This document shows, piece after piece, positions 28,655 through 63,060 of a stretch of DNA of 64,000 nt (position 1 is the first letter of the stretch; each line of letters opens with the position of its first letter). The notes under the pieces were generated by a model that was given only the letters and a program-made list of their open reading frames with translations, was not told where the DNA came from and made no database searches. The stretch lies in IMG/VR virus record IMGVR_UViG_3300046787_000408, positions 62,001 through 126,000 of that record; one strand, given 5' to 3'. A program made the translations under genes and the position numbers.

Positions 28655-28677
28655 GTCTATTGCGTTAACCACACGTA

Positions 28678-29598: not shown

Positions 29599-29599
29599 T

Positions 29600-30661
29600 A
29601 TGGGAAAACCATTTGATATTTCAAAATTCCGCAAGGAAATTACCAAGAGCATTGACGGCCTAAGTATTGGCTTCAACGATCCCACAGACTGGATCTCCAC
29701 TGGCAACTATGCACTAAACTACCTGATCTCAGGTGACTTCCAACGTGGCATTCCCTTGGGCAAGGTCACTGTGTTTGCTGGTGACTCAGGTGCAGGCAAG
29801 AGCTATATCTGTTCAGGCAACATTATCAAACATGCACAAGAGCAAGGCATCTTTGTTGTGCTGGTTGATAGTGAAAACGCCTTGGACGAAAACTGGCTCA
29901 AGGCACTTGGCGTTGACACTAGTGAGCAAAAATTGCTCAAACTCAGTATGGCCATGATTGATGATGTGGCCAAGACTATTGCTACATTCATGAGCGATTA
30001 CAAAGCACTGCCTGATGGCGAGCGTCCTAAGGTACTGTTTGTTATTGACAGCTTGGGTATGTTGTTGACTCCAACAGACGTTAACCAGTTTGAAGCAGGC
30101 GAAATGAAGGGTGATCTTGGCCGTAAGCCAAAAGCGCTCACTGCCTTGGTGCGTAACTGTGTGAACATGTTTGGTTCATACAACGTGGGCTTGGTATGTA
30201 CCAACCACACATACGCAAGTCAGGACATGTTTGACCCCGATGATAAAATCTCAGGCGGTCAGGGTTTCATTTACGCTAGCTCAATTGTTGTTGCTATGAA
30301 AAAGATGAAGCTGAAAGAAGACGAAGACGGTAACAAAGTTAGTGAAGTCAATGGTATCCGTGCTGGCTGCAAGGTCATGAAAACACGTTATGCCAAGCCC
30401 TTTGAAGGTGTGCAGGTCAAGATTCCATACACAACAGGTATGAGTCCTTACTCGGGTCTTACTGACTTGATTGAGAAAAAAGGCCTGCTCAAGAAAGAAG
30501 GCAACAGCCTGGTGTTTACCACAAGCCAAGGCGAGATCATCAAGAAGTTCCGCAAGGGATGGGAACGCAACGATGACGGTTGCCTGGATACTGTAATGAA
30601 TGACTTTGGTAACATCAAGGAGGTAAGTACTCCTGAAACTGAATTAGAGGATGCAGAATGA
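29600..30661 (+). CDS. uvsX: RecA-like recombinase UvsX
   Basis: GDSGAGKS Walker A, VDSENALD, VIDSLG, NHTY, SGG.GF.YAS. Confidence 0.93.
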   Translation: MGKPFDISKFRKEITKSIDGLSIGFNDPTDWISTGNYALNYLISGDFQRGIPLGKVTVFAGDSGAGKSYICSGNIIKHAQEQGIFVVLVDSENALDENWLKALGVDTSEQKLLKLSMAMIDDVAKTIATFMSDYKALPDGERPKVLFVIDSLGMLLTPTDVNQFEAGEMKGDLGRKPKALTALVRNCVNMFGSYNVGLVCTNHTYASQDMFDPDDKISGGQGFIYASSIVVAMKKMKLKEDEDGNKVSEVNGIRAGCKVMKTRYAKPFEGVQVKIPYTTGMSPYSGLTDLIEKKGLLKKEGNSLVFTTSQGEIIKKFRKGWERNDDGCLDTVMNDFGNIKEVSTPETELEDAE

Positions 30662-30918
30662 GTTCAATTGTAGCAAGCGAAATCTGGAACGAACTAAAGC
30701 GTTACGTAAACACAGTGGATCGGCAGGAAGCTGCTGAAACGCTGGTGTCAGTGTTGATTGATCATGACGAAGATGTTGAAGACATTCGTGATGCGTTCAA
30801 GCATGACAGTGATATCAAGCGAGCGCTTACGGCATATCTTGACAATGACAAAAGTTATGATGACGAAGACGATGAAGAAGCCGACGACCTAGACGACGAA
30901 ACCGACTGGGAAGACTAA
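30658..30918 (+). CDS. Small acidic hypothetical protein
   Basis: Coupled ORF with a D/E-rich tail. Confidence 0.7.
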   Translation: MSSIVASEIWNELKRYVNTVDRQEAAETLVSVLIDHDEDVEDIRDAFKHDSDIKRALTAYLDNDKSYDDEDDEEADDLDDETDWED

Positions 30919-31371
30919 ATGTGGTACCATCGTGTAACATCGGACTTGAGTAATATTCCGGGATTCATTGCACACTATGAGACTGAGCTGATTGACGCCA
31001 AGAGAGATTGCAAGATTGGCGGCACCATGGAACATCATATCAAAGAGTTACCCGGTATCACAGAACAAAGATTCAACCAGCTACAAGAAATTGAAGCTGT
31101 GTTGAACTTTCTCAACATTCAATTACGAAAAATTCGTCGCAAGCATTTTCAAAAGTATCTTGAAGGCTACGCTCGGGCACTTACCAGTCGTGACGCTGAA
31201 AAATACGTGGATGGTGAGGACGAAGTAATTGACTTTGAGACCATTATCAATGAAGTTGCACTATTGCGCAACAAGTGGTTGGGTATCATGAAGGGGCTTG
31301 ATAGCAAGCAATGGATGTCAGGTCACATTGTTAGACTTCGTGCAGCCGGTATGGAAGATATTACACTGTAA
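30919..31371 (+). CDS. uvsY: Recombination mediator UvsY
   Basis: Helical protein with YLE.Y.R.L.S.D.EKYVDGE and K.LD.K.W....IV.LR.AG. Lies downstream of uvsX. Confidence 0.8.
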   Translation: MWYHRVTSDLSNIPGFIAHYETELIDAKRDCKIGGTMEHHIKELPGITEQRFNQLQEIEAVLNFLNIQLRKIRRKHFQKYLEGYARALTSRDAEKYVDGEDEVIDFETIINEVALLRNKWLGIMKGLDSKQWMSGHIVRLRAAGMEDITL

Positions 31372-42401: not shown

Positions 42402-43268
42402 ATGAGCATTCTGTATATCCAACTTGAAGATCTAACACTACAGTTTCGTGTGCTGGCCACTCCTGTAGCAGAGCTATGGCAGGAGCGAATGAGCCAACGT
42501 CATGCTTGGCCTTTGGATCATCCCAAACGTTTTTATGGATTTGACAGTGCCAAAATTGAAGCAGATCGTGCAATTTCTGAGATCAATCGCTGTGTGAGCA
42601 CAATCAACCAGTACCAGCAAATTATTGACCGTGGCGTAACAGATGTGCATGATCAAGACACGTTGAATTATCTGCACAACATATTTGAACGCTATCACGG
42701 TTTGTTGGATCAGCAGAACAATGAATACTGGGTCTCTGCTCCGGAGCAGGTTCGTGTGGCACTAGCAGAACTCAACTTGGCTGTGCATAGATGTGAGACT
42801 GCACAATCAGCACCAAACCCCAGGATGGTCTGCACCTGGTACGGACAACCCAAACAGTACACTTTGCCGCTGACAATGCAACAGCAATATGGCACCACAA
42901 GTCCGCCCTGGGGCAGCGTTTGCTTGAACTACTGCGAAATAGGCAAAACACTAGAAGACCTGGCTCGTGACAACGATCACTATATTGGTGATGATGCGTT
43001 TCGGCCATTTTCTCATTACAGTAGTGACTTTGTAGTGAGATTCTTTGAACACTTGCCACAAACACTTGACAACCTCCGTGCAAATATGCAACAATACTAC
43101 AATACGCACCAAGAGTTTTTTCACAAGCGTGGGTTTGCATCTTTTGATGACACCCGACTACAACCATTGCGGTTCCCAGTAGCACAATTAATAGAGACTA
43201 TGCCAAGAGCTCGATTGTTACAGGAGATAGCAGCCAGACAACAAGTGAGCAGTATACAAATACAATGA
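42402..43268 (+). CDS. Hypothetical protein
   Basis: Start re-picked 6 nt after a TTGACT-17-TATACT promoter. Coupled to uvsW. Confidence 0.65.
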   Translation: MSILYIQLEDLTLQFRVLATPVAELWQERMSQRHAWPLDHPKRFYGFDSAKIEADRAISEINRCVSTINQYQQIIDRGVTDVHDQDTLNYLHNIFERYHGLLDQQNNEYWVSAPEQVRVALAELNLAVHRCETAQSAPNPRMVCTWYGQPKQYTLPLTMQQQYGTTSPPWGSVCLNYCEIGKTLEDLARDNDHYIGDDAFRPFSHYSSDFVVRFFEHLPQTLDNLRANMQQYYNTHQEFFHKRGFASFDDTRLQPLRFPVAQLIETMPRARLLQEIAARQQVSSIQIQ

Positions 43269-44734
43269 AACAAGCAACCATAGTAATCAAAGACGAAGTA
43301 AACATCAAGATAGAGGGCCTGGATCTTGACTGTCGCAAAAAATTAGTAAACACCTTCAAGTACGAAATACCCGGTGCACGATATCAACCTGCTGTGAGAT
43401 TGGGTAGGTGGGATGGTAAAGTGGCATACTTTCAACTGGGCGGATCCAGCTATATCAACCTGTTACCTGAGATACTGCCTATACTGGAACAGTATGACTA
43501 TGATGTTGATCTAGATGATCAGCGTGACTACCAAACTGTTTTTGAGTTCACACAAATACGTGAAGACTCATTCTCTCACAAGGTATGGCCCAAAGGACAT
43601 CCTGTGGCTGGCCAACCAGTAATGTTGCGAGACTATCAAGTCAAGATTGTAAACGACTATTTGAGCAATCCGCAGTGCATACAAGAAGTGGCCACAGGTG
43701 CAGGCAAAACATTAATGACTGCTGCCTTGAGTCTTAGTGTAGAACAATATGGCCGCACTATTGTGATTGTGCCCAACAAGGACCTGGTACGACAAACCGA
43801 AGCTGACTATATAAATCTAGGTCTAGACGTAGGCGTATACTTTGGAGACCGCAAAGAGAAAGGTCGTACTCACACCATTTGCACTTGGCAAAGTCTCAAC
43901 GTGCTATTAAAAAACACACAAGCTGGTACTGGAGACTTTACAATACACGAGTTTATTGAAGACGTGGTATGTGTAATTGTAGACGAAGTACACATGGCCA
44001 AAGCTGATGCACTCAAGACTCTGCTGTCAGGTGTAATGAGTCGTATCCCTATTCGTTGGGGACTCACTGGTACGGTGCCAAAAGAACCATATGAGTTCAA
44101 GAGCTTGTTGGTAAGCTTGGGACCAGTGATTAGTCATCTTAGTGCTAGTGAACTACAAGATCGCGGGGTACTGGCCAACTGTCACGTGAACATTGTGCAG
44201 TTGATAGATCATGTGGAGTACAAAGAATACCAAAGCGAGCTTAAATATTTGCTGGAAGAGTCGGGCAGGCTTGATGCAATGTCTGGGTTGATCAAAACTA
44301 TCAACGAAACAGGCAACACTCTTGTGTTGGTAGATCGAGTGGCTGCTGGTCATGCCTTGGTTGAACGGCTGGGTGACAAAGCAGTATTTGTGAGTGGTGC
44401 TACTAAATCCAAAGACCGACAAAACGAATATGCTGAAGTTGCAGATGCAACAGACAAAATCATTGTGGCCACTTATGGTGTGGCTGCTGTGGGTATCAAC
44501 ATACCTCGTATTTTTAATCTGGTACTTGTGGAGCCTGGCAAAAGCTTTGTTCGAGTCATTCAAAGTATTGGACGCGGCATTCGCAAAGCTGAAGACAAAG
44601 ATCATGTGCAAATCTGGGACATAACTTCCACATGCAAATTTGCCAAGCGTCATTTGACCAAGCGCAAGCAGTTTTACAAAGATGCTAACTATCCTTTCAC
44701 AGCAGAAAAGCTGGACTGGATGAAAATTGCTTGA
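43265..44734 (+). CDS. uvsW: SF2 DNA helicase UvsW
   Basis: ATGAGKT, VIVDEVH, GLTGT, QSIGRGIR. Confidence 0.92.
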   Translation: MKQATIVIKDEVNIKIEGLDLDCRKKLVNTFKYEIPGARYQPAVRLGRWDGKVAYFQLGGSSYINLLPEILPILEQYDYDVDLDDQRDYQTVFEFTQIREDSFSHKVWPKGHPVAGQPVMLRDYQVKIVNDYLSNPQCIQEVATGAGKTLMTAALSLSVEQYGRTIVIVPNKDLVRQTEADYINLGLDVGVYFGDRKEKGRTHTICTWQSLNVLLKNTQAGTGDFTIHEFIEDVVCVIVDEVHMAKADALKTLLSGVMSRIPIRWGLTGTVPKEPYEFKSLLVSLGPVISHLSASELQDRGVLANCHVNIVQLIDHVEYKEYQSELKYLLEESGRLDAMSGLIKTINETGNTLVLVDRVAAGHALVERLGDKAVFVSGATKSKDRQNEYAEVADATDKIIVATYGVAAVGINIPRIFNLVLVEPGKSFVRVIQSIGRGIRKAEDKDHVQIWDITSTCKFAKRHLTKRKQFYKDANYPFTAEKLDWMKIA

Positions 44735-44765: not shown

Positions 44766-45269
44766 ATGCGAATTCTAACACTTGACCAAAACACCGCTTA
44801 TGACCTTGATCATCTTCCTGAAGAAGTAGATGACATGCGTTTTGCTATTCTAGATAACTCGGACCCCAAAGATCCTGACTATCAGTTTATACCACTTATC
44901 TTTCTAGAAAGTTTCAACAGTCCTGCTCTAGTATTGCGCATTGGCAAAAACACAATTCGAATGCCCATGGACTGGCAAATCTTGATTGGCGAACCTGAAG
45001 TAGGTGATCTTGAAGTGTTACCGTTAACATCAATTAACGATCGAGGATTCAAAGTATTTCAATTCAACCCACTCAGTAGCTTTAGGCCCAGTTTTCCTGA
45101 CATTGAAATCTTGGATGTTTATCATGAAGTTTCGTGGTATGCTCCCAAGCTCAAGAATGGGCAAATGCTGGCTGTGCCTTTGAGTGATGAAGCTGAACCT
45201 GACTGTGTGTATTTTGTAAAAGATGTTAGTCGCAACTGCGAGATCGTGGATTACAACAAGGCGTGGTAA
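44766..45269 (+). CDS. Conserved hypothetical protein
   Basis: Clean ORF 6 nt after a TTGACA-17-TACACT promoter. Confidence 0.7.
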   Translation: MRILTLDQNTAYDLDHLPEEVDDMRFAILDNSDPKDPDYQFIPLIFLESFNSPALVLRIGKNTIRMPMDWQILIGEPEVGDLEVLPLTSINDRGFKVFQFNPLSSFRPSFPDIEILDVYHEVSWYAPKLKNGQMLAVPLSDEAEPDCVYFVKDVSRNCEIVDYNKAW

Positions 45270-45271
45270 TC

Positions 45272-45529
45272 ATGGGCGATCTAACTCCTGGTGCCACTTA
45301 CATATATGAACGAGTTGGAGACACTGTGTTTAGACGAGAACCAGGATCTTTAGAGCGCGAAGTAGTAGGGTACGATCATCGTACCTCAGATGGTAGGCCC
45401 TTGCACGAACATATTATGGATGCCAAGATGTGGGGTGAGATTAGACGTGCAGCACCTTCGAACCCTGCTTTACAAGATGCCCTGGACCGTGTTATAATGA
45501 TATATCAACTGAGCCGAACCAATGAGTGA
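45272..45529 (+). CDS. Small hypothetical protein
   Basis: MGDLTPGATYIYERVG..., in operon. Confidence 0.6.
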   Translation: MGDLTPGATYIYERVGDTVFRREPGSLEREVVGYDHRTSDGRPLHEHIMDAKMWGEIRRAAPSNPALQDALDRVIMIYQLSRTNE

Positions 45530-45968
45530 TAAACTAAACATTGCCAACGAGATGCGAGTGTTTGACCGCAAGGACAGAACATTCTATGACAATCTAACAC
45601 CCGAAGAGCGCAAGAAGTTCAGCAACTTTCTAATGTTGCGTTGGGGCAGTTCAGTTGAAGGTTCTCGAGACCTACAAGAGTTTTATGTGATCAGTTGCAA
45701 TGAACGTTTCAACAAACACTTTTTTGATCTAGGAAAACATCCTAAATTGCAATGGCTGTTGGCCACAACAGTAAGTCCAGACATGGGAACACCGCGCCAC
45801 CCCTGGATTGCACCCAAGAAAAAAGAGCCCGGCGCAAGCTCGTTCAAGAAACAACTGAGTGAGTTGTTTCCACACTTGAAAAATGATGAAATTGATTTGT
45901 TGGCAGCAATCACTACCAAAAAAGAACTAGATGCATACATTCGTCAGCATGGCAACGACCCCAAGTAA
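45522..45968 (+). CDS. Possible clamp-loader small subunit (gp62-like)
   Basis: F..F...R..S, N...N.....L.KH..LQW..., H.WI..KK pattern and replication-gene context. Confidence 0.5.
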   Translation: MSDKLNIANEMRVFDRKDRTFYDNLTPEERKKFSNFLMLRWGSSVEGSRDLQEFYVISCNERFNKHFFDLGKHPKLQWLLATTVSPDMGTPRHPWIAPKKKEPGASSFKKQLSELFPHLKNDEIDLLAAITTKKELDAYIRQHGNDPK

Positions 45969-46638
45969 ATTCAGCTGTGACTTTTGCAACAAGACCTTTG
46001 CTAAGGAAACTAGTATAGCAGTTCACATGTGTGAGGCCAAGCGCCGTCATCAAGAGCAGAACGAGCCTGGTGTAAGACTGGGCTTTCAAGCCTACGTGAA
46101 GTTCTATGCAACAGTACAACGATCAGCCAAGACCAAGACATTTGAAGACTTTGCTGGCAGCGCATATTACAAAGCATTTGTAAAGTTTGGACGATACTGT
46201 GTAGATACTCGCACAATCAATCCTGGTCAGTTCATGACATGGTTGTTGAAGCACAACAAAAAGATTGACTACTGGTGTTCAGACAGAGTGTACACAGAAT
46301 ACTTGTTGGACTATCTCAAGGTAGAAGCTGTGGAAGATGCACTGGCACGAGCTATTGAGTACAGTATGACCTGGGCAGAAAACACTCAAGCATCTCCACA
46401 TGATTGTTTGCGTTACGGCAATGTGCATGCTTTGTGCTATGCTATATCGTCTGGCAGACTAAGTCCGTGGACCATATACTGTAGTGATTCAGGACAGAAG
46501 TTTCTCAGCAACTTGGATGCAGCGCAGGTCAGTTTGATCTGGCCCTATATTGATTCAGACGTATGGCTAAAAAAGCTACAGCAGAATCCTGATGATCAGG
46601 CATATGCTAGAACAATTTTAACTCAAGCAGGATGGTAA
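45949..46638 (+). CDS. C2H2 zinc-finger-containing protein
   Basis: FSCDFCNKTFAKETSIAVHMC at the N-terminus. Confidence 0.65.
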   Translation: MATTPSKFSCDFCNKTFAKETSIAVHMCEAKRRHQEQNEPGVRLGFQAYVKFYATVQRSAKTKTFEDFAGSAYYKAFVKFGRYCVDTRTINPGQFMTWLLKHNKKIDYWCSDRVYTEYLLDYLKVEAVEDALARAIEYSMTWAENTQASPHDCLRYGNVHALCYAISSGRLSPWTIYCSDSGQKFLSNLDAAQVSLIWPYIDSDVWLKKLQQNPDDQAYARTILTQAGW

Positions 46639-46639
46639 C

Positions 46640-46987
46640 ATGATTAGAAGTATCACAGGCGGAAACGGCATAACGGTTTCAGGCAGCGTGTACAGCGCCC
46701 CTTATATCGACAACTCACGAGCCAGTGCTGGCATGGTGCGGTACAACAGCGGCAACGTTGAAGTATATGATGGTAGCTCCTGGGTGACCATGCAATCTGG
46801 CTACCCTACCATTGAACTGGATGGAGTAACACAAGAAGCAATACAATGGGTAAAACGAAAAATGATTGAAGAAAAGCGCATGCTTGAGCTGGCCAAAACT
46901 CATCCCGCAGTGGCAGATGCATTGGCAGCACAACAACGAGCCGAGGAAGCAGTGCGCATTGCAGTGGCCCTGTGTGACGTGCAATGA
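46640..46987 (+). CDS. Hypothetical protein
   Basis: Coupled ORF with a C-terminal coiled coil. Confidence 0.6.
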   Translation: MIRSITGGNGITVSGSVYSAPYIDNSRASAGMVRYNSGNVEVYDGSSWVTMQSGYPTIELDGVTQEAIQWVKRKMIEEKRMLELAKTHPAVADALAAQQRAEEAVRIAVALCDVQ

Positions 46988-47733
46988 ATGATCATCCATT
47001 GATCTACTGTAACGGAGATAGTTACAGTGATGAGAATTACCACACTTCTCTTGTGGGCAAAACATACGCTCACGTGCTAGGGGAACACTTAAATGGTTTT
47101 GTAATCAACAATGCACTACGAGGTAGTTGTAATCGCCGCATAATTAGAACCTCAGTGCATGATTTAATACAACAACGACAACAAAACCCTGAACAAAGAA
47201 TTATTGCATTAATTGGGTTGTCTTTTGAAATAAGGTCAGAACTTTGGATTGAAAATGCAACCCCCAAGTCAGCACAAGAATCAAATTTTCAAACACATAC
47301 ATTTGCTGACAAAGACAACTGGCGTGACCTGCTGCTAGCAGGAAAAAAGATGTTTGATAAAGAGAACAAATTCCTTGACAAATATAACCAAGGTCGTGCA
47401 TACTACTACAGTCCGTACGCTGAGAGAGCAAATCTTTTGTGCGATTGTGTGATGTTCCAAGCACTAATGAAAGATTTAAACATCGAATTCTTGATGTTTC
47501 AATCGCCACAAGCTGAACAGTTAGAAAATGAATATCTTGTTGATTTTTTTAAATCACAGCTGGACAACAACTGCTTTATTGACTTTGAATCATTTGGGTT
47601 TGTGGATTGGTGTCACGAACAAGGATTTGTTCCGTTAGATTTCCTAGATCGCCCCAACATTGGACACCCTACTGCTCAAGCCCATCGTGCATTTGCAGAA
47701 CAGATTGTTATACCCTACTTTGGTAAATTATGA
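46984..47733 (+). CDS. SGNH/GDSL-like hypothetical protein
   Basis: YCNGDSYS, N.A..GSCN.RI, GHP...AH. Confidence 0.55.
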   Translation: MNDHPLIYCNGDSYSDENYHTSLVGKTYAHVLGEHLNGFVINNALRGSCNRRIIRTSVHDLIQQRQQNPEQRIIALIGLSFEIRSELWIENATPKSAQESNFQTHTFADKDNWRDLLLAGKKMFDKENKFLDKYNQGRAYYYSPYAERANLLCDCVMFQALMKDLNIEFLMFQSPQAEQLENEYLVDFFKSQLDNNCFIDFESFGFVDWCHEQGFVPLDFLDRPNIGHPTAQAHRAFAEQIVIPYFGKL

Positions 47734-48308
47734 GCGCAGATATTGACATTGACATGCCCGACAGGGACGCTGTGCTGAAGTTGATTCAGCATACTCCGGC
47801 ACGGATTGAATCAGGAACATCTGTACGCAAACACAATTCAGGTATCTATGTTACAGATATCCCACAAGATCCTGTGCATGGTGTATCTGCATTAGACTAC
47901 GAAACTGCTGAAGCTCGTGGCTATTTCAAACTGGATTTTCTGAACATGAGCGTGTACAGTTTGATTCAAAGTCCCGAACACTATGATGCTATGCTAGCAG
48001 AAACTCCTCCATGGAGCCGCTTGTGGACAGATGCTCATTGGGTCAGCCAGCTGTCACATGTAGGCAGTTATTATGATTTGTTGAAAGAAATGAAACCAGA
48101 CAGTATACCAAGACTGGCTGCTTTTATATCAATTATTCGTCCAGGAAAAGCACATCTACAAAGAAAACCTTGGGCAGAAGTGTTTGCAAGTGTATGGGAT
48201 GGAGATACCAGTCGGGGCTACACATTCAAAAAGGCACATGCAATTAGCTATGCAGCCTTGGTAGCGCTACACATGAATCTGCTTAATCAATCCGCCGAAC
48301 CAGTGTAA
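47730..48308 (+). CDS. Miniature DNA polymerase III alpha (DnaE/PolC) catalytic-domain protein
   Basis: DIDID, KHNSGIYV, GYFKLDFL, LAAFISIIRPG and GYTFKKAHAISYA match DnaE motifs (PDFDVDF, KHAGGVVI, GLVKFDFL, LVALFRPG, GYGFNKSHSAAYA) in order. Confidence 0.82.
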   Translation: MSADIDIDMPDRDAVLKLIQHTPARIESGTSVRKHNSGIYVTDIPQDPVHGVSALDYETAEARGYFKLDFLNMSVYSLIQSPEHYDAMLAETPPWSRLWTDAHWVSQLSHVGSYYDLLKEMKPDSIPRLAAFISIIRPGKAHLQRKPWAEVFASVWDGDTSRGYTFKKAHAISYAALVALHMNLLNQSAEPV

Positions 48309-48660
48309 TTGATTTTCTCTTGCTTTTTTTGCGAGCAATGTCCAGTAAGCTGCAAGCAGGTCCGTGCAGTATTTCTAGGTCTTTGTTTGAAAATGTACGC
48401 AAGGTGTGTCTGAATCGATCCCATTCTCCGCGCAAGAAAATGTTAATGGGTATGCTGCGATTGCTCTCCCACCACCAGGTATTTGCTAGTTCTAGGAATA
48501 CCAGTTTGTCTTGTAAGTCAGTAACATGACCAAAGTCGTAGATGGTAGTAACAGTGTCGTCTCTGTTTTGAACTATGCCCACGTATTCCACGTTTGCGTA
48601 CAAGCAAAGCGTGATAAAGGGGTATTTTTCTGCTAACTTAGTAAAGATGTCGTTGCCCAT
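48283..48660 (-). CDS. Hypothetical protein
   Basis: 125 aa ORF containing WWWESNRSIPINIFL. Confidence 0.65.
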   Translation of the reverse strand: MGNDIFTKLAEKYPFITLCLYANVEYVGIVQNRDDTVTTIYDFGHVTDLQDKLVFLELANTWWWESNRSIPINIFLRGEWDRFRHTLRTFSNKDLEILHGPACSLLDIARKKSKRKSITLVRRID

Positions 48661-49775: not shown

Positions 49776-50744
49776 ATGTTGGACATTCTCACTTATCTGC
49801 CTGCCAAGCGTAAATCAAGCCCTAGTGGCTGGTTGAGCTTTAATGCAGTATGTTGTAGTCACAATGGTGCTAGCCTAGATCGTCGCAGTCGCGGCGGCAT
49901 CAAACTGTCCGATCAAGGATGGAGTTATCATTGTTTCAACTGCGGGTATACTGCTAGCTTTATTCTTGGCCGCTCGGTAAGCTACAAAGCCCGTAGACTC
50001 TTGAGCTGGCTGGGTGTACCTGATCGTGATATTGAACTGATCAACCTTGACAGTCTAAGACATCGCAACATCAATGGGTTAATTGAGGATCGGCAACGCA
50101 CATTTAACGTACTGCAAGGTATTGAGTTTGAAGAACGTGAATTGCCTGCTGGCGCAGAGTTTGTGCAACCTGGCACCACTTACTGGAGCTACCTATCCGC
50201 ACGCCATGCCCCGACCAATTTTCCGTTCATGATTGATCCCATGAGCAAGCGCAAAGGTATCATTATACCTTTCACACACAACAATCGTGTGGTAGGATGG
50301 ACCAAGCGTTTCCTGGATGCACATAACCCCAGATACTTTAGCGATAGTCAGCCAGGCTATGTGTTTGGTACTGATTTACAACATCCAGACTGGCAGCATG
50401 TGATTGTAACTGAAGGCATCTTTGATGCACTCAGCATTGGTGGTCTAGGTCTAATGCACAACGACATCAATGATGCTCAGGCTAGACTGATACGCAGTTT
50501 GGAGCGTCAAATCACTGTGGTACCTGATCAAGACAGTGCAGGCTTGGCTCTGATTGATCGTGCTGTGGAATTGGGATGGGCAGTGAGCATACCCAACTGG
50601 GATGATGGCGTCAAGGACGTTAATGATGCGGTGAAGAAATACGGGCGTTTGGGTACCTTGCTAACTATTATGCAGGCACGAGAAACCAGCAGAATCAAAA
50701 TTGAACTAAGGAAAAAAGCACTTGTTAAAAGAATACAACACTGA
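49776..50744 (+). CDS. gp61: DNA primase (Zn ribbon + TOPRIM)
   Basis: CC.H...YHCFNCG, IVTEGIFDAL, VPDQD.AG, KDVND. Confidence 0.88.
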   Translation: MLDILTYLPAKRKSSPSGWLSFNAVCCSHNGASLDRRSRGGIKLSDQGWSYHCFNCGYTASFILGRSVSYKARRLLSWLGVPDRDIELINLDSLRHRNINGLIEDRQRTFNVLQGIEFEERELPAGAEFVQPGTTYWSYLSARHAPTNFPFMIDPMSKRKGIIIPFTHNNRVVGWTKRFLDAHNPRYFSDSQPGYVFGTDLQHPDWQHVIVTEGIFDALSIGGLGLMHNDINDAQARLIRSLERQITVVPDQDSAGLALIDRAVELGWAVSIPNWDDGVKDVNDAVKKYGRLGTLLTIMQARETSRIKIELRKKALVKRIQH

Positions 50745-52158
50745 AGTACAGCGATTGTTTTTGGAAATGATGTTAGAAGACGCCAGCTCGTATGTGCGTG
50801 TGCAAAACATTTACAATCCAGAAAACTTTGATCGTAGTCTACGCAAAGCCGCAGAGTTTATTAAAGAACACTCAGACAAGTACAAGACTCTGCCAGATCG
50901 CACACAGATATCTGCGGCATGTGGTGTTACATTGCAAGCAGTACCTGATCTAAACGAAGGGCACAATGAATGGTTCATGTCTGAGTTTGAAAGCTTTACC
51001 AAGCGTCAAGAACTTGAACGTGCTATTCTCAAAGCAGCCGACTTGCTGGAAAAGGGTGATTTTGATCCTGTGGAAAAACTGATCAAGGATGCAGTGCAGA
51101 TCAGCTTGACCAAGGACATGGGTACAGACTATTTTGCTGACCCTGCAGGCCGTATCAACAAGTACTTCAATTCAGGCGGACAAGTTAGCACAGGCTGGCC
51201 ACAAATGGATCGACTGCTGTATGGCGGATTCAGTCGTGGTGAACTCAACATCTTTGCAGGTGGATCAGGTTCAGGCAAGTCACTTGTGATGATGAACATT
51301 GCGCTGAACTGGTTGCAACAAGGTCTAAGTGGTGTTTACATCAGTCTTGAATTGAGTGAAGAACTGACATCGTTGCGTACTGACGCTATGTTGACCAGTA
51401 TGAGTACCAAGGACATTCGCAAGGACATTGATTCAGCAGAGCTCAAGGTCAAGATGACAGGGCGCACAGCAGGCAAATACCGTGTTAAAGCATTGCCAGC
51501 ACAAAGCAACATCAATGATATTCGCAGTTACATCAAAGAAGTGCAGATACAAACAGGTATCCGCGTGGACTTTATCATGGTAGACTACTTGGACTTGCTG
51601 ATGCCAGTAAGCGCCAAGGTCAGTCCCAACGACTTGTTTGTGAAAGACAAGTATGTGTCAGAAGAATTACGAAACTTGGCCAAAGAGCTGGGTGTGTTGC
51701 TGGTAACAGCATCACAGTTGAATCGATCAGCGGTGGAAGAAATTGAATTTGATCACTCACACATTAGTGGTGGTATTTCAAAGATCAACACAGCTGATAA
51801 CGTGTTTGGTATCTTTACTAGTCGTGCTATGAAAGAGCGCGGCAAGTATCAAATACAGTGTATGAAATCTCGAAGCTCGACCGGCGTTGGTCAAAAAATT
51901 GATTTGGAGTATAACATTGACACTATGCGTATTACTGATGAAGGCGGGGACGAAGGCGGATACAACAAACCGCAAAGTGCTATCATGGAATCAATCAAGG
52001 CCAAAAGCCAAGTCAAGGCTGCTGATGCCGAAACAAACAGCAGTGCTCCATGGGAACGTGCAACAGGAACCCCTGCATGGGAGCAAGGACCCAAAGTATC
52101 AGCAGACGTTCAAAGTTCTAAACTAAAACAAATGCTGGGCAAGATCAAAGCAGGGTAA
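50722..52158 (+). CDS. gp41: Replicative DnaB-like helicase
   Basis: GGSGSGKS, YISLE, VDYLDL, TASQLNR. Confidence 0.92.
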   Translation: MLKEYNTEVQRLFLEMMLEDASSYVRVQNIYNPENFDRSLRKAAEFIKEHSDKYKTLPDRTQISAACGVTLQAVPDLNEGHNEWFMSEFESFTKRQELERAILKAADLLEKGDFDPVEKLIKDAVQISLTKDMGTDYFADPAGRINKYFNSGGQVSTGWPQMDRLLYGGFSRGELNIFAGGSGSGKSLVMMNIALNWLQQGLSGVYISLELSEELTSLRTDAMLTSMSTKDIRKDIDSAELKVKMTGRTAGKYRVKALPAQSNINDIRSYIKEVQIQTGIRVDFIMVDYLDLLMPVSAKVSPNDLFVKDKYVSEELRNLAKELGVLLVTASQLNRSAVEEIEFDHSHISGGISKINTADNVFGIFTSRAMKERGKYQIQCMKSRSSTGVGQKIDLEYNIDTMRITDEGGDEGGYNKPQSAIMESIKAKSQVKAADAETNSSAPWERATGTPAWEQGPKVSADVQSSKLKQMLGKIKAG

Positions 52159-52159
52159 C

Positions 52160-53113
52160 ATGATTACTTGCGTAGATGCGTTTAAAAATCTAAACGTTGT
52201 TATACAGCAAGGTGGTACTAGAATATCGCCTTGTTGTATATCGCCTACTGTGCCGGTACAGCAGTTGGATTTTAACCACAGCTACCTAACTTCTATTAGA
52301 GAAAGTTTTTCTCAAGGAACATGGCCTTCTAGCTGTGTTAATTGCAAAACTAACGAGCAAGCAGGATATACTAGTAGACGGATAGGCAGTAACCAATGGT
52401 ATACTGATCATCAAATAAACAACCACTCAGTTGAATTAACTAGGATAGACTATTGGACTGGTGACACCTGCAACCTTGCTTGTGTAATATGTGGTCCTGA
52501 AAACAGCAGTATGTGGCAACAGGAATTGGGGATTCAAAAATCATCAGTTGCCAACACACTATGGAAGCAACTGAATCTAACAGCATTAAAATCTGTACAC
52601 TTCAACGGAGGAGAACCGTTGTTGAGTAAAGAGCATGTGCGATTTTTACATGCAATTCCAAATAAATCACAAGTATATTTAAATTACAATACCAACGGAA
52701 CTATTTTACCTAATCAAGAGCTACAACAATTGTGGGCTGAATTCAAGTTAGTACAATTGGATTTTAGTATTGATGATGTAGGCAAAAGATTTGAATACCA
52801 GCGATATCCTGCCCAATGGGATACAATTGAAAACAATTTACAATGGTACATTGAATCTGCTCCGCACAATTGTATGTTCGCAGTCAACACCACAGTGGGG
52901 ATATTGAATCAAAATAACTTAGCTACTCTTGATCAGTGGTTGTTGGAGCATTTTACCCAATCAAGATTTGGTGATCCAATTGAGCATCGTCGACAGAATG
53001 CATTGGGTAAATTTTCAATAACATCTGATATTATACAGGTACGACTGCACCTTGACACACTAGATCAAAGACGCAAAACCAATTGGCGTCTTGTGTTCCC
53101 AGAGTTAGCGTGA
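52160..53113 (+). CDS. Radical SAM protein with N-terminal twitch/SPASM-like domain
   Basis: ISPCC, C..C, CNLACVIC, NGGEP, YNTNG. Confidence 0.85.
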   Translation: MITCVDAFKNLNVVIQQGGTRISPCCISPTVPVQQLDFNHSYLTSIRESFSQGTWPSSCVNCKTNEQAGYTSRRIGSNQWYTDHQINNHSVELTRIDYWTGDTCNLACVICGPENSSMWQQELGIQKSSVANTLWKQLNLTALKSVHFNGGEPLLSKEHVRFLHAIPNKSQVYLNYNTNGTILPNQELQQLWAEFKLVQLDFSIDDVGKRFEYQRYPAQWDTIENNLQWYIESAPHNCMFAVNTTVGILNQNNLATLDQWLLEHFTQSRFGDPIEHRRQNALGKFSITSDIIQVRLHLDTLDQRRKTNWRLVFPELA

Positions 53114-53752
53114 AGGCCAAACTGGAGCGTCAGCAGTGTAAATGGTTAAGCCCAACAAGCCACTGTAACGAACAGAATCTGTGCGATTCCAACCTTCGTG
53201 CCAGGTGTAGTTGCCATTTTGATGCCACCATCCATCACCAAAGTTGGTAGTCATACGCACAGGATCATCTCGTTGTTCTGTGCGGTAAAAGTAACTGCTG
53301 AGATCTTCGGTGTCATGATCGCTAAAGTATATCATGCCGGTGGCAATTAGTTTTCTGTAGTCAGTGTGCAGCCCGTTTACAAAGCCCGGCATGTCACGAG
53401 TAAATTCAATGTGTGTTTGGCTTTGTCTAAACATAGTGTCTCGATCCATGCCCCACGCAACATCTGTACCAGGATAGTTGTCGTACATCCAGTCAATGCT
53501 TTGACGTTTGAATTCTGAACCACCAAAGTATCGACTGATAGCAGTTAGTTTTTTGTTCTCCCACTTTGGACTCAGCACCTTGTAACGCATGCCTGGCCAA
53601 GGGTTGTGCCCAACAGGAGCCACATCACCGTGTGGTTTCCATTCTTCATTTTCTAGTTCTGCAATAATATCACTGTAGCTGAATGGCATTTTGAGATGCA
53701 GTTTGCTCACAAGATAACGAATGGGAGTGAATATAGTGGATAGTTCTGTCAT
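53105..53752 (-). CDS. 2OG-Fe(II) oxygenase-like protein
   Basis: LHTD...IYF...WHEG...R. Start re-picked 8 nt after a minus-strand TAAATA. Confidence 0.65.
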   Translation of the reverse strand: MTELSTIFTPIRYLVSKLHLKMPFSYSDIIAELENEEWKPHGDVAPVGHNPWPGMRYKVLSPKWENKKLTAISRYFGGSEFKRQSIDWMYDNYPGTDVAWGMDRDTMFRQSQTHIEFTRDMPGFVNGLHTDYRKLIATGMIYFSDHDTEDLSSYFYRTEQRDDPVRMTTNFGDGWWHQNGNYTWHEGWNRTDSVRYSGLLGLTIYTADAPVWPSR

Positions 53753-53785
53753 AGCATACATATTTAATCATGGGATACACACACA

Positions 53786-54982
53786 ATGGAAAAAGGTAAA
53801 AATTTGTATTGTGCCTGGGCTGACACAGGCCTAGCACTGCATAATTCAGGACGATGCTTGCTGTGTTGTCATAGCCAAACTTATTTGCAGGACACAAATG
53901 GCCAGGAAATATACCTGGACACAGGCTCTATTGAACAGGCCTGGAACAGTCCCACTAGAAAACAAATTCAAGCAGATCTTGAAGCTGGTATTCAGCATCC
54001 CAATTGCAGCGCATGTTGGAACGAAGAAAGTGCAGGGCGTGCAAGTCGCCGCACAGAAGCCAATCGACAGTTTGCTGATATCACTGTCAACCCTGACCGT
54101 CCGCAACTGGTAGACCTTAAACCTGGCAATACCTGCAACTTGGCATGCAGAACCTGTTGGCCTGAAGTCAGCAGCAAATGGTATCGAGACTATTGGGAAG
54201 TTGAAGCTCAGAAATGGGAACCAGACTACCGCAAGTATCTTGATGGGTGGAAACGTATCCGCACCAGTTATGACCGCGATAACGTAAAGCTGTGGTCTGA
54301 CCTAGAATCGTGGTTTACAGACGTAGAGTACTATGACATCTACGGGGCAGAGCCAATGCTGTTGGACAATGTGTTTGTGATCTTACAACAAAGTGTGGCA
54401 TCAGGTAGAGCAGCACATCAAGGCATACACATCAACACCAACTGTACTATATGGAATCAAAGCTACATTGATATTCTTGCACAATTCAAGAACGTGGTTA
54501 TTGACGTTAGCATTGATGGGATTGGCGCACAATATGACTATATTCGTTATGGCGAAACTTGGAGCACTGTGGAACTGAATCTTGCTAGGTATCAGAATCT
54601 AGTTCGTAACCACAGCAACATTCGCATGCATGTTTGTGTCACTGTGTGTATTCTAAATGTATTGCAAGTGATGAACCTGCAGGAATATTTTTGTGCCCGT
54701 GGTGTTCCTGTATTTTTTAACATGGTACATCATCCACAACACTTGAATGTGAGATCCTTGCCTGACACTATCAAACAACAGGTACGAGCCAAGTTTGCAC
54801 CTGCTGAACCCAATTGGCAAATAACCAGTATACTGGATTTCATGGACATGCCCCTGGACAATCAACCTCAACTGTGGCTCAAGTTCTTGGAGTCAACAAA
54901 AAAGCTAGACCTGTTACGAGAACAAGATCTAGCTGAAACGTTTCCTGAATTGGCAGAATTGATTAGCCGGCTACAGCCTTGA
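53786..54982 (+). CDS. Radical SAM protein with N-terminal twitch/SPASM-like domain
   Basis: YCAW...G...LCC, C..CW..E, CNLACRTC, GAEP, INTNC, SIDG. Confidence 0.87.
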   Translation: MEKGKNLYCAWADTGLALHNSGRCLLCCHSQTYLQDTNGQEIYLDTGSIEQAWNSPTRKQIQADLEAGIQHPNCSACWNEESAGRASRRTEANRQFADITVNPDRPQLVDLKPGNTCNLACRTCWPEVSSKWYRDYWEVEAQKWEPDYRKYLDGWKRIRTSYDRDNVKLWSDLESWFTDVEYYDIYGAEPMLLDNVFVILQQSVASGRAAHQGIHINTNCTIWNQSYIDILAQFKNVVIDVSIDGIGAQYDYIRYGETWSTVELNLARYQNLVRNHSNIRMHVCVTVCILNVLQVMNLQEYFCARGVPVFFNMVHHPQHLNVRSLPDTIKQQVRAKFAPAEPNWQITSILDFMDMPLDNQPQLWLKFLESTKKLDLLREQDLAETFPELAELISRLQP

Positions 54983-61837: not shown

Positions 61838-62131
61838 ATGATCAAAATTATCACAGCAGTAGCACTTTTGTTTGCAACCAATGCACATGCCTGGGGCGAT
61901 CGTGAGCAAGGCGCTTTGGCAGGTATTGTGGGCACATTGATTTGGCAAAAGCTAGAACATCAAAATCACCCACCAAGGCCTCAAGTGATTCATCAGCCGG
62001 TGTATACACAGCCCACAGTGATTTATCAGTATCCACAGCCCATGCCCGAGCGTCAGTGCTATGTGGTACGTGAAACTCGCAACTACAACGGTTCCTACAC
62101 CAGAGAGATTCACTGTCATGGCCTACAGTGA
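61838..62131 (+). CDS. Small exported protein (signal peptide, glycine-zipper-like, Pro/Gln-rich)
   Basis: MIKIITAVALLFATNAHA signal, GALAGIVG segment, two Cys. AAGGAG RBS. Confidence 0.65.
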   Translation: MIKIITAVALLFATNAHAWGDREQGALAGIVGTLIWQKLEHQNHPPRPQVIHQPVYTQPTVIYQYPQPMPERQCYVVRETRNYNGSYTREIHCHGLQ

Positions 62132-62513
62132 CAAAGTAGTAGATCACTACGAAAACCCCCGCAACGTTGGTTCGTTTGACAAAAACGACTTGGACGTGGG
62201 CACTGGCATGGTAGGTGCACCTGCATGCGGTGATGTAATGAAACTGCAAATTCGAGTTCAAGATGGAATTATTACAGATGCAAGATTCAAAACCTATGGT
62301 TGCGGTAGTGCAATCGCAAGTTCCTCTCTTGTTACCGAGTGGGTTAAAGGCAAGACGTTGGACCAGGCCGCAGCTCTTAAAAATTCAGAGATTGCTGAAG
62401 AACTTGCACTGCCCCCAGTCAAAATCCATTGTAGCATCCTTGCTGAAGACGCCATCAAAGCCGCAGTAGACGACTATCGTAAACGTCATGAAAATACAAC
62501 ACAGTCACAGTGA
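62118..62513 (+). CDS. iscU: Fe-S cluster scaffold protein IscU/NifU-N
   Basis: MAYSDKVVDHYENPRNVG, GAPACGDVM, FKTYGCGSAIASSS, LPPVKIHCS.LAEDAI. All three Cys present. Confidence 0.95.
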   Translation: MAYSDKVVDHYENPRNVGSFDKNDLDVGTGMVGAPACGDVMKLQIRVQDGIITDARFKTYGCGSAIASSSLVTEWVKGKTLDQAAALKNSEIAEELALPPVKIHCSILAEDAIKAAVDDYRKRHENTTQSQ

Positions 62514-63060
62514 ACATCTAGCAGAATACGCAACTCATCTAAAGAATCTTACCGAGCAAGATAGATATACACGGTTTGGTTATGCCGCATCACCGGCTGC
62601 CATTGACTCCATGATCTTGAACATGCTGTATAATCAGAGTCAACATCATTTGTTTACGTATCGCATTGACAATCGTGTTGTGGGCTTTGGGCATTTGGCA
62701 CGTGAAGGAGCCGACTGGGAACTGGCAGTTAGTATAGATCATGAGTACCAAGGACGAGGTATTGCCAACGAACTAATGTCACACATGATTGCTTGGGGCA
62801 AGGTACACGGAGTTCATTCAGTGTTCATGCATTGTATTACAGACAATCAAAAAATACAACATCTGGCTCGCAAGCATGGATTAAAAACCATGAGTCGTGC
62901 CGGGCATGAAATAACTGCACAAGTAGAACTGCCAGATCCCACTGTGCTAGATTATACCGCAAACTTTGTAGCTGAACAACAAGAGCTAGCCCAGGGAATT
63001 GCAAAGCTACAACGCACCTGGCTCAGGAATTGGTTGAAGCCTAGTAATCATGCAGTATGA
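62488..63060 (+). CDS. GNAT acetyltransferase
   Basis: ELAVSIDHEYQGRGIA..L (motif A) and N.....L..K.G. Confidence 0.85.
   Translation: MKIQHSHSEHLAEYATHLKNLTEQDRYTRFGYAASPAAIDSMILNMLYNQSQHHLFTYRIDNRVVGFGHLAREGADWELAVSIDHEYQGRGIANELMSHMIAWGKVHGVHSVFMHCITDNQKIQHLARKHGLKTMSRAGHEITAQVELPDPTVLDYTANFVAEQQELAQGIAKLQRTWLRNWLKPSNHAV

What the first reader, a model, noticed from the sequence alone, without database searches (positions are those of the whole stretch)
47730..48308. A 192-aa miniature C-family DNA polymerase that keeps all three catalytic aspartate motifs
Seen: the ORF contains, in DnaE order, DIDID-x-RD.V (E. coli PDFDVDF..RDQV, carrying D401/D403), KHNSGIYV, GYFKLDFL (KFDFL, D555), LLKEMKPD...LAAFISIIRPG, and GYTFKKAHAISYA. 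Established: DnaE/PolC proteins are usually over 1000 aa, with PHP, thumb, extended fingers, clamp-binding and OB domains. This ORF has an intact start (ATGA-coupled) and stop, and deletes the spacers between motifs rather than being truncated at one end. It sits two genes from primase and helicase in a T4-like phage, which would normally use a B-family gp43. Inference: it may be a minimal palm-only nucleotidyltransferase (primer extension, repair or end-processing) or one subunit of a split polymerase whose other parts are separate ORFs.
Basis: partly seen in the sequence, partly recalled or inferred. Interest (0 to 1): 0.82.

Follow-up and report, generated by a model that had tools for sequence, protein, structure and literature searches.

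The report
Half of a split mini DNA polymerase
This 192-residue phage gene is real and conserved, but it is only the metal-binding half of a two-piece miniature relative of the bacterial replicative DNA polymerase, a kind of enzyme predicted in giant phages in 2021 and, as far as my searches show, not yet tested at the bench.

Summary
It is a full-length member of PHROG 11778 (E 1e-52). Its profile hits only Pol III alpha chains in the PDB. Its AlphaFold model (pLDDT 95.6) matches only C-family polymerases. D4, D6, K67 and D69 are invariant in 82 diverse relatives, and dN/dS is about 0.13.

It is not a complete polymerase. It lacks the first part of the palm, which carries the triphosphate-binding GRGS motif. 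That part is a separate 172-aa gene on the same 299,983-bp freshwater phage contig, 97 kb downstream and outside the window, next to a GroES-like gene and the clamp loader. Rare natural fusions (375-376 aa) join the two pieces end to end.

The thumb, most of the fingers, and the PHP, clamp-binding and OB domains are absent, and no fragments of them were found. This is the C-terminal unit of the split minimal Pol III alpha that Iyer et al. (2021) described in group 2.2 jumbo phages such as RaK2, 121Q and PA5oct. This is a new member of a known but biochemically untested kind.

The parts
47730..48308 (+). C-terminal (metal-binding, catalytic Asp plus finger stub) unit of the split minimal Pol III alpha-like polymerase, 192 aa
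   Evidence: ORF. PHROG 11778 at E 1e-52. PDB profile hits only Pol III alpha. AF2 pLDDT 95.6, and Foldseek top 15 all Pol III alpha. dN/dS about 0.13.
47739..47753 (+). Codons for D4-I-D6-I-D8, the DxD metal-binding strand (E. coli D401/D403/D405)
   Evidence: D4 and D6 are invariant and D8 is at least 90% conserved in 82 representatives. All three are invariant in 62 close relatives. The fusion P0159 aligns to DnaE-type sequences across GRGS and DFDID. hhalign and BLAST differ by two residues in register.
47832..47843 (+). H35-N-S-G38, the palm strand that follows the thumb in DnaE (E. coli H511-G514); here it follows a short hairpin in place of the thumb
   Evidence: BLASTP against E. coli DnaE. 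H35 and G38 are at least 90% conserved. Model strands E22-28 and E31-40.
47928..47936 (+). K67-L-D69: the third catalytic Asp and the phosphate-contacting Lys (E. coli K553, D555)
   Evidence: Invariant in 82 representatives. Aligned to KFD of DnaE by BLASTP and by the family profile.
48138..48149 (+). R137-P138-G139-K140, a finger-domain motif (E. coli R639-P640-G641)
   Evidence: P138 is invariant; R137 and K140 are at least 90% conserved. Weak Pfam DNA_pol3_finger match over residues 115-142. HMM alignment.
48228..48239 (+). K167-K168-A169-H170 on the 'steric gate' helix (E. coli N757-K758-S759-H760)
   Evidence: K167 and H170 are at least 90% conserved. HMM alignment of FKKSH to FNKSH. [quoted passage not shown]
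48283..48660 (-). Conserved convergent neighbour (PHROG 11637, unknown function) overlapping the 3' end of the ORF by 26 nt. Context only, not shown to be part of the enzyme.
   Evidence: PHROG match at E 1.6e-29. The same convergent overlap occurs in Phosso, Paride and 121Q and beside the fused gene.
44766..46638 (+). Conserved upstream block of three unknown genes (PHROGs 11279, 11758, 11058; the last has a C2H2-like zinc finger), syntenic with Paride_0014-0016. Context only.
43265..44734 (+). UvsW-type helicase. Context.
   Evidence: PHROG 16 at E 2e-72.
49776..52158 (+). DNA primase (49776-50744) and DnaB/gp41-type helicase (50722-52158), two genes downstream. Context.
   Evidence: PHROG 47 at E 8e-26 and PHROG 19 at E 3e-74.

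Best explanation
The ORF encodes the C-terminal unit of a two-chain, minimal C-family (DnaE-like) polymerase.

What this chain supplies:
- the beta-strand with the DxD pair (D4, D6, and also D8);
- the strand with K67 and the third Asp, D69;
- a stub of the fingers domain, with the RPGK motif and the helix bearing the steric-gate His (H170).

What it lacks: the first part of the Pol-beta-like palm, with the GRGS triphosphate-binding loop. That part is made from a separate 172-aa gene on the same strand, 97 kb downstream on the same phage genome (contig positions 207,174-207,692, which would be window coordinates 145,174-145,692).

Inferred mechanism: the two chains associate non-covalently to rebuild one active site, about 364 aa in total. 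This site adds dNMPs to a 3'-OH by the two-metal mechanism. Without thumb, PHP, clamp-binding and OB domains, the enzyme should be distributive and non-proofreading. It most likely acts as an accessory polymerase to the family B replicase that its relatives carry, for example in primer extension, gap filling or recombination-linked synthesis.

Shown here: homology, fold, residue conservation, purifying selection, presence of both genes in this genome, and natural fusions.

Inferred, not shown: physical association, DNA polymerase activity, and biological role.
For: Family and fold:
- PHROG 11778 'DNA polymerase' at E 1e-52.
- The profile of 82 representatives hits only Pol III alpha in the PDB.
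- AF2 model pLDDT 95.6 and pTM 0.88. Foldseek PDB top 15 are all Pol III alpha, with probability 1.0 for the top eight. BFVD top 19 are all viral DnaE-type polymerases.

Conservation:
- D4, D6, K67, D69 and P138 are invariant; D8, H35, G38, R137, K140, K167 and H170 are at least 90% conserved.
- Median pairwise dN/dS is 0.126, maximum 0.22, over 255 pairs.

The partner gene:
- The natural fusion P0159 (375 aa) shows a GRGS-containing N-part, a linker of about 10 residues, then DFDID.
- The N-part hits a separate gene of about 170 aa in 92 phage records, the same jumbo phages that hold the C-half (96 records).
- 49 of 49 IMG/VR N-half ORFs end right after ...EF[LIM][KR], or within three residues of it, just before where DxD would follow.
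- This genome's own N-half was found with a WGVGRGSSVASY DNA pattern. It was placed at contig 207,174-207,692 beside Cpn10-like and clamp-loader genes. It matches PHROG 11127 at E 1e-35 and Pfam PF07733 at 24.5 bits against a cut-off of 23.9.

The fused model:
- pLDDT 86.6 and pTM 0.83.
- Foldseek PDB top 13 are all DnaE/PolC, with E down to 4e-8.
- hhalign of the fusion alignment against E. coli DnaE residues 320-420 gives probability 95% and covers GRGS and the DxD.

Literature: Iyer et al. 2021 describe exactly this split enzyme in group 2.2 jumbo phages. [quoted passage not shown]
Against: - No direct evidence that the two chains bind each other. The only model of the joined enzyme is of a distant natural fusion, not of this genome's pair.
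- With no thumb and only a finger stub, it is unclear how primer-template DNA would be held.
- No biochemical data on any family member turned up in the paper library.
- No RNA run holds the gene, so expression is unshown.
- The family B polymerase expected alongside it was not found in the roughly 139 kb of the contig that I read.
- The register of D4/D6 against D401/D403 differs by two residues between hhalign and BLAST. I could not superpose coordinates.
Confidence: 0.8

Rival explanations
1. Stand-alone palm-only nucleotidyltransferase: the 192-aa protein works alone as a minimal polymerase or end-processing enzyme.
For: It folds confidently on its own (pLDDT 95.6) and holds all three Asp and the Lys.
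Against: - It lacks the GRGS triphosphate-binding loop that defines Pol-beta-like NTases. That loop is invariant in the partner gene.
- The partner gene is present in this genome and in 92 of the phage records, against 96 that hold the C-half. At least three of the extra C-half records are sub-genomic, at 86-110 kb.
- Natural fusions join the two.
Confidence: 0.06
2. The two halves do assemble, but the enzyme is not a template-dependent DNA polymerase. It could be another nucleotidyltransferase (template-independent tailing, or a nucleotide-derived signal or modification), or an enzyme whose activity is gated by bringing together two separately expressed halves.
For: - The thumb and most of the fingers, which hold duplex DNA in DnaE, are gone.
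- The two genes sit 30-100 kb apart in different gene neighbourhoods.
- Relatives already have a family B replicase.
Against: - The retained finger elements are the DnaE-specific ones around the incoming dNTP, including the steric-gate His, which is at least 90% conserved.
- Structural matches are to C-family polymerases only. Other NTases appear only as noise, at E of 2 or more.
- Both genes sit in replication modules: primase and helicase for one, clamp loader for the other.
Confidence: 0.12
3. Decayed or frameshifted remnant of a full-length dnaE.
For: The ORF is short and matches only parts of DnaE.
Against: - dN/dS is about 0.13 and the catalytic residues are invariant.
- There are 370 clusters at 50% identity, nearly all about 190 aa apart from shorter, mostly partial sequences and one 375-aa fusion, and at least 7,904 clusters at 90% identity.
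- The flanking ORFs are unrelated to DnaE, and tblastn with DnaE finds no other pieces.
- Start and stop positions are conserved across relatives.
Confidence: 0.01
4. The two halves are joined after translation by a split intein, as in cyanobacterial DnaE.
For: Split dnaE genes joined by trans-splicing inteins are known in cyanobacteria (from my own knowledge, not checked here).
Against: There is no room for intein halves. The C-half has only three residues before the DxD strand, and the N-half ends at ...AEFLR, right where DnaE has ...FERFLN. Natural fusions need only a linker of about 10 residues.
Confidence: 0.01

Closest known systems
Split minimal DNA polymerase III alpha of group 2.2 jumbo phages (Iyer, Anantharaman, Krishnan, Burroughs, Aravind 2021, Viruses 13:63); C-terminal unit = PHROG 11778, N-terminal unit = PHROG 11127; e.g. 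121Q genes 16 and 56, Ettore_0017 and 0087, Phosso genes 437 and 138
   Same: - Same two-gene architecture, with the split just before the DxD strand.
- Same conserved residues and same lengths (about 190 and 170 aa).
- Same synteny. The C-half lies between the UvsW block and primase/DnaB, with a convergent small gene. The N-half lies upstream of the GroES-like and clamp-loader genes.
   Different: - Only 35-43% identical to the versions in isolates.
- From an uncultivated freshwater phage.
- The halves are 97 kb apart, against 30-44 kb in most isolates.
- Two lineage-specific ORFs are inserted directly upstream.
Bacterial DnaE / PolC (C-family replicative polymerase alpha; PDB 2HNH, 2HPI, 3E0D, 5LEW, 3F2B)
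   Same: Pol-beta-like palm with DxD, a third Asp and a Lys. Finger motifs RPG and FxKSH with the steric-gate His. These are the only significant sequence-profile and fold matches.
   Different: - About 364 aa in two chains, against 1,160 aa in one.
- No PHP domain and no thumb (29 residues against 108).
- About 88 residues of the fingers are deleted, and everything after E. coli residue 765 is missing (clamp-binding, OB, tau-binding).
- The C-half fails the Pfam PF07733 threshold.
Natural single-chain mini Pol III alpha (P0159, P0271, P0272; 375-376 aa, metagenomic)
   Same: N-half plus a linker of about 10 residues plus C-half. 40% identical to the window ORF over the C part. Same convergent neighbour gene.
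   Different: Fused rather than split. Rare: three clusters found. Recognised by Pfam PF07733.
Cyanobacterial split DnaE joined by a split intein (from my own knowledge)
   Same: A C-family polymerase encoded by two distant genes.
   Different: Here there are no intein sequences, the split site differs, the enzyme is minimal, and association is presumed to be non-covalent.

Membership tests
Split minimal Pol III alpha of group 2.2 jumbo phages, C-terminal unit (PHROG 11778) | Full-length similarity to the family profile and to the orthologues in RaK2, 121Q and PA5oct-type phages | tested here: met
   PHROG 11778 at E 1.2e-52, residues 3-187 on profile positions 7-193 of 197. tblastn finds 96 phage records at 35-43% identity and at least 95% coverage.
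Split minimal Pol III alpha of group 2.2 jumbo phages, C-terminal unit (PHROG 11778) | Mg-binding residues (DxD and the third Asp) conserved | tested here: met
   D4, D6 and D69 are invariant in 82 representatives and in 62 close relatives.
Split minimal Pol III alpha of group 2.2 jumbo phages, C-terminal unit (PHROG 11778) | A separate N-terminal NTP-binding (GRGS) unit encoded by a distant gene in the same genome | tested here: met
   L295:10587-11105, 172 aa, contig 207,174-207,692, 97 kb downstream. PHROG 11127 at E 1e-35; Pfam PF07733 at 24.5 bits against a 23.9 cut-off.
Split minimal Pol III alpha of group 2.2 jumbo phages, C-terminal unit (PHROG 11778) | No other Pol III alpha domains (PHP, thumb, clamp-binding, OB) in the protein or the genome | tested here: met
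   None in the protein. tblastn with DnaE finds none in about 139 kb of the contig. The remaining roughly 160 kb was not read.
Split minimal Pol III alpha of group 2.2 jumbo phages, C-terminal unit (PHROG 11778) | Genome of the group 2.2 type: jumbo size and a T4-like replication set (gp32-type SSB, UvsW, gp41-type DnaB, clamp loader) | tested here: met
   Contig of 299,983 bp. SSB, UvsX, UvsY, UvsW, primase and DnaB in the window. Clamp loader beside the N-half.
Split minimal Pol III alpha of group 2.2 jumbo phages, C-terminal unit (PHROG 11778) | Accompanied by a family B DNA polymerase | tested here: inconclusive
   No PolB in contig 54,988-173,161 or 196,588-217,184, judged by Pfam calls on the called genes and my scans. 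The rest was not read. Reported for relatives: RaK2 gp100 and Iyer 2021.
Bacterial C-family polymerase alpha subunit (DnaE/PolC) | Pol-beta-like palm with three catalytic Asp, recognisably homologous | tested here: met
   Profile against the PDB at E 3.4e-6, Pol III alpha only. Foldseek. hhalign probability 95%.
Bacterial C-family polymerase alpha subunit (DnaE/PolC) | Complete palm (GS motif and Asp triad) in one polypeptide | tested here: not met
   No GRGS-type motif in the ORF or in any plausible gene of the window. It lies in a separate gene.
Bacterial C-family polymerase alpha subunit (DnaE/PolC) | N-terminal PHP domain | tested here: not met
   No Pfam PHP hit on either half. No tblastn hit with DnaE residues 1-270.
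Bacterial C-family polymerase alpha subunit (DnaE/PolC) | Thumb domain between the DxD strand and the KHAGG strand | tested here: not met
   29 residues (D6 to H35) against 108 (D403 to H511). The model shows a beta-hairpin, E22-28 and E31-40.
Bacterial C-family polymerase alpha subunit (DnaE/PolC) | Full fingers, clamp-binding motif and OB fold | tested here: not met
   24 residues against 112 between RPG and GYxF. Only 17 residues after the SYA motif, against 395 in E. coli.
Bacterial C-family polymerase alpha subunit (DnaE/PolC) | Passes the Pfam PF07733 (DNA_pol3_alpha) gathering threshold | tested here: not met
   The C-half has no PF07733 hit at E up to 10, only PF17657 finger at 13 bits against a cut-off of 22. 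The N-half passes.

The most novel reading that the evidence does not exclude
The split is functional, not an accident of gene order. The two halves sit in different gene neighbourhoods 30-100 kb apart: one in the primase/helicase module, the other in the GroES and clamp-loader module. They would be made separately, so the smallest known C-family polymerase (about 364 aa, with no thumb) would become active only when both are present. That would give the phage a timed or conditional second polymerase, for instance for primer hand-off to PolB or for recombination-dependent synthesis.
Probability: 0.15. Interest if true: 0.7.

Novelty: new member of a known kind. Interest (0 to 1): 0.4.

Why it matters
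If the two chains really form an active enzyme, it would be by far the smallest C-family DNA polymerase. It would show which parts of the 1,100-1,400-residue bacterial replicase are needed for catalysis: the palm plus two finger helices, with no thumb. It would also put a bacterial-type polymerase core next to an archaeo-eukaryotic-type family B replicase in one replisome.

The family is very common in aquatic metagenomes, with at least 7,900 clusters at 90% identity. No bench work on it turned up in the paper library I searched. The point itself was made in 2021, however. This window adds one orthologue, the exact split point, natural fusions, and evidence of selection.

Tried and rejected
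Searches on the ORF that found little or nothing:
- Single-sequence phmmer against the PDB found nothing.
- Pfam on the ORF gave only a sub-threshold finger hit.
- Megablast of the locus against phage genomes found no near relative.

Looking for the N-half in the window:
- A regex for GS motifs and tblastn with four N-half queries found nothing.
- I walked the contig downstream in four steps to 173 kb without finding it.
- The search for related loci with an N-half alignment returned 80 other contigs, not this one.
- A degenerate DNA pattern for WGVGRGSSVASY finally hit the contig.

Other dead ends:
- The first fusion alignment (A3) misaligned the N-halves onto the C-halves, so I discarded it. 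I tested sequence sets locally until MAFFT placed both halves correctly, giving A4.
- P0284 and P0285 (540-551 aa, PHP plus palm) looked like possible intermediates. They align like ordinary DnaE N-terminal parts, so I set them aside.
- The neighbours proposed as partners (44766, 45522, 45931, 46640, 48283) show no DnaE-like signal in Pfam or PHROGs.
- The promoter and terminator scan was not above chance.
- No RNA run holds the gene, so I did not use read laying.
- The hunt for PolB found none in the parts of the contig read. One look-up failed on a wrong start codon.
- The literature searches found no experimental work on the family.
Full report
**1. The observation**

Its ATG overlaps the TGA of the upstream ORF (ATGA), and it ends in TAA. 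Every listed motif is present.

BLASTP against E. coli DnaE (fetched as L004) aligns residues 34-139 with DnaE 510-641 at 26% identity. That stretch includes KHNSG/KHAGG, KLDFL/KFDFL and IIRPG/LFRPG. Residues 163-175 align with DnaE 753-765, GYTFKKAHAISYA against GYGFNKSHSAAYA. The E. coli numbering was checked directly: D401, D403, D405, R411; H511; K553, D555; R639-G641; G753-A765.

**2. It is a real, conserved family with a DnaE fold**

- Sequence searches. Pfam sees only a sub-threshold finger hit, and single-sequence phmmer against the PDB sees nothing. PHROG 11778 ('DNA polymerase', 197 positions) matches end to end at E 1.2e-52.
- Family size. There are at least 7,904 clusters at 90% identity and 370 at 50% identity. 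Nearly all are about 190 aa, apart from shorter, mostly partial sequences and one 375-aa fusion.
- Conservation. In an alignment of 82 representatives, D4, D6, K67, D69 and P138 are invariant. D8, H35, G38, R137, K140, K167 and H170 are at least 90% conserved.
- PDB profile. The family profile hits only Pol III alpha chains from E. coli, Thermus aquaticus and M. tuberculosis, with best E 3.4e-6. The alignment is collinear and the next hit is at E 0.44.
- Structure. The AlphaFold2 model has pLDDT 95.6 and pTM 0.88. Foldseek against the PDB returns Pol III alpha as the top 15 hits, then noise. Against BFVD, the top 19 are viral DnaE-type polymerases.
- Selection. Across 61 close relatives from IMG/VR, the median pairwise dN/dS is 0.126 and the maximum 0.22, and all key residues are invariant.

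None of them is met.

**3. It is only half an enzyme**

One representative, P0159, is 375 aa. Its first 189 residues end in ...GVGRGSSSAS...KYKLNIKEFIK. A linker of about 10 residues follows, and then DFDID and a C-half that is 40% identical to the window ORF. GRGS is the triphosphate-binding motif of DnaE (R362-G363-S364), about 35 residues upstream of D401.

Used as a tblastn query, that N-part hits a separate gene of about 170 aa in 92 phage records. These are the same RaK2, 121Q, PA5oct, Phosso and XacN1-type jumbo phages that hold the C-half (96 records). The gene usually lies 30-44 kb downstream of the C-half. All 49 N-half ORFs that I extracted from IMG/VR end right after ...EF[LIM][KR], or within three residues of it. 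That is the position of DnaE ...FERFLN, just before the DxD strand. The split point is therefore fixed in a loop between the GS helix and the metal-binding strand, with no room for intein halves.

Fusions are rare. I found three clusters of 375-376 aa, all carrying Pfam PF07733. They sit at the C-half locus, beside the same convergent neighbour gene.

A model of the fusion has pLDDT 86.6 and pTM 0.83. It matches only DnaE and PolC structures, which fill the top 13 places with E down to 4e-8. hhalign of the fusion alignment against E. coli DnaE covers residues 320-420, spanning GRGS and the DxD, at 95% probability. In BLAST against a DnaE-type protein, DFDID aligns with DFDID. hhalign shifts this register by two residues, and I could not superpose coordinates to settle it. 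The invariance of D4 and D6, with D8 slightly less conserved, favours D4/D6 = D401/D403.

**4. The partner gene in this genome**

The window is positions 62,001-126,000 of JGI contig Ga0485269_000012 (299,983 bp, also IMGVR_UViG_3300046787_000408), from a freshwater metagenome. The N-half is not in the window, nor in the next 47 kb.

A degenerate DNA pattern for WGVGRGSSVASY hit the contig. The gene is L295:10587-11105, 172 aa, at contig 207,174-207,692. It is on the same strand, 97 kb downstream of the C-half. A 69-aa gene, a Cpn10-like gene, a 63-aa gene and the clamp loader follow it, and further downstream there is a PhoH gene on the opposite strand. This matches the order in Ettore and 121Q. 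It matches PHROG 11127 'DNA polymerase' at E 1e-35 and passes the Pfam PF07733 threshold, 24.5 bits against 23.9.

**5. What is missing**

| Region | Window ORF | E. coli DnaE | Meaning |
|---|---|---|---|
| DxD to the KHxxG strand | 29 residues (D6 to H35) | 108 residues (D403 to H511) | Thumb replaced by a beta-hairpin |
| RPG to GYxF | 24 residues | 112 residues | Finger insert lost |
| After the SYA motif | 17 residues | 395 residues | Rest of fingers, clamp-binding, OB and tau-binding lost |

There is no PHP domain on either half. tblastn with DnaE finds no further pieces in the roughly 139 kb of contig read. They form a conserved syntenic block of unknown function (PHROGs 11279, 11758, 11058, and the convergent 11637), shared with Paride at 35-51% identity.

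**6. How it most likely works**

The C-half supplies the metal ligands (D4, D6, D69), the phosphate-contacting Lys (K67) and two finger helices. One helix carries RPGK. The other carries K168 and H170, the counterparts of E. coli K758 and H760. H760 is the proposed steric gate against ribonucleotides and is reported as invariant in Pol III alpha (PMC8485763). The N-half supplies the GRGS loop and the rest of the palm scaffold.

I infer non-covalent assembly into one active site that does templated, dNTP-specific two-metal catalysis. The enzyme would be distributive and without proofreading. It would act beside a family B replicase, which is present in relatives: RaK2 gp100 and Iyer 2021. Both genes sit in replication modules. 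The role (primer extension or hand-off, gap filling, or recombination-dependent synthesis) is a guess.

**7. Comparison with what is known, and novelty**

Iyer et al. [quoted passage not shown] PHROGs and several GenBank records already label both genes as DNA polymerase or DnaE-like.

This ORF meets every testable feature of that family except the accompanying PolB, which I did not find in the part of the contig I read. It fails most defining features of DnaE proper. I found no experimental work on the family.

- the exact split point;
- rare natural fusions, which serve as Rosetta-stone evidence;
- replacement of the thumb by a hairpin;
- retention of the steric-gate His;
- strong purifying selection;
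- very high abundance in aquatic metagenomes;
- a 97-kb separation of the two genes in this phage.

**Verdict:** This is a new member of a known kind. Interest is moderate at 0.4, because the family is remarkable but already described.

Noticed in passing
window 46640-47733: Two lineage-specific ORFs sit between the conserved PHROG 11058 gene and the C-half: 115 aa, and 249 aa with a GDS-type motif near the N-terminus. The second has a weak Pfam DUF6071 hit and no PHROG match, and it is ATGA-coupled to the C-half. In Paride and 121Q the PHROG 11058 gene lies much closer to the C-half: it abuts it in Paride, and one small gene intervenes in 121Q.
   Followed up: partly
window 48283-48660 (-): A small gene of unknown function (PHROG 11637) converges on the C-half and overlaps its 3' end by 26 nt. 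The same convergent overlap is kept in Phosso (4 nt), Paride (17 nt), 121Q (14 nt) and beside the fused 376-aa gene (L296). It may be a functional partner, but this is untested.
   Followed up: partly
window 45931-46638: A conserved 235-aa neighbour (PHROG 11058, E 1.5e-51) has an N-terminal C2H2-like zinc finger (sub-threshold in Pfam). It is always in the block upstream of the C-half.
   Followed up: no
P0159, P0271, P0272; L296:519-1649: Rare single-chain versions (375-376 aa) of the split enzyme, found only on short metagenomic contigs. The 2021 description does not mention them, as far as I could read.
   Followed up: yes
window 27662-31371 and 43265-44734: A T4-like recombination set in the same order as 121Q genes 6-10: SSB, UvsX, UvsY, then UvsW. 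About 12 kb of auxiliary genes (glycosyltransferase, 2OG-Fe(II) oxygenase-like, heptose-phosphate enzyme-like) are inserted between UvsY and UvsW. The DnaQ-type 'exonuclease subunit' that sits there in 121Q was not found.
   Followed up: partly
window 52160-54982; L005/L010/L011/L174: An unusually large number of radical-SAM genes: at least six across the window and the next 50 kb. There are also NifU-like and Fe-S-assembly-like genes and a GNAT acetyltransferase (window 62061-63060).
   Followed up: no
contig 133-173 kb (L011, L012, L174): Host-like proteostasis and translation genes on the phage contig: ClpX-like AAA+, ClpS, two ClpP-like, HSP20, and ribosomal protein S21. Pseudomonas phage Ettore also has the S21-Hsp20-ClpS run.
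   Followed up: no
BFVD entry A0A249Y020: A 374-aa viral protein ranks among the DnaE-type fold matches. It may be another short C-family form. No name was available.
   Followed up: no
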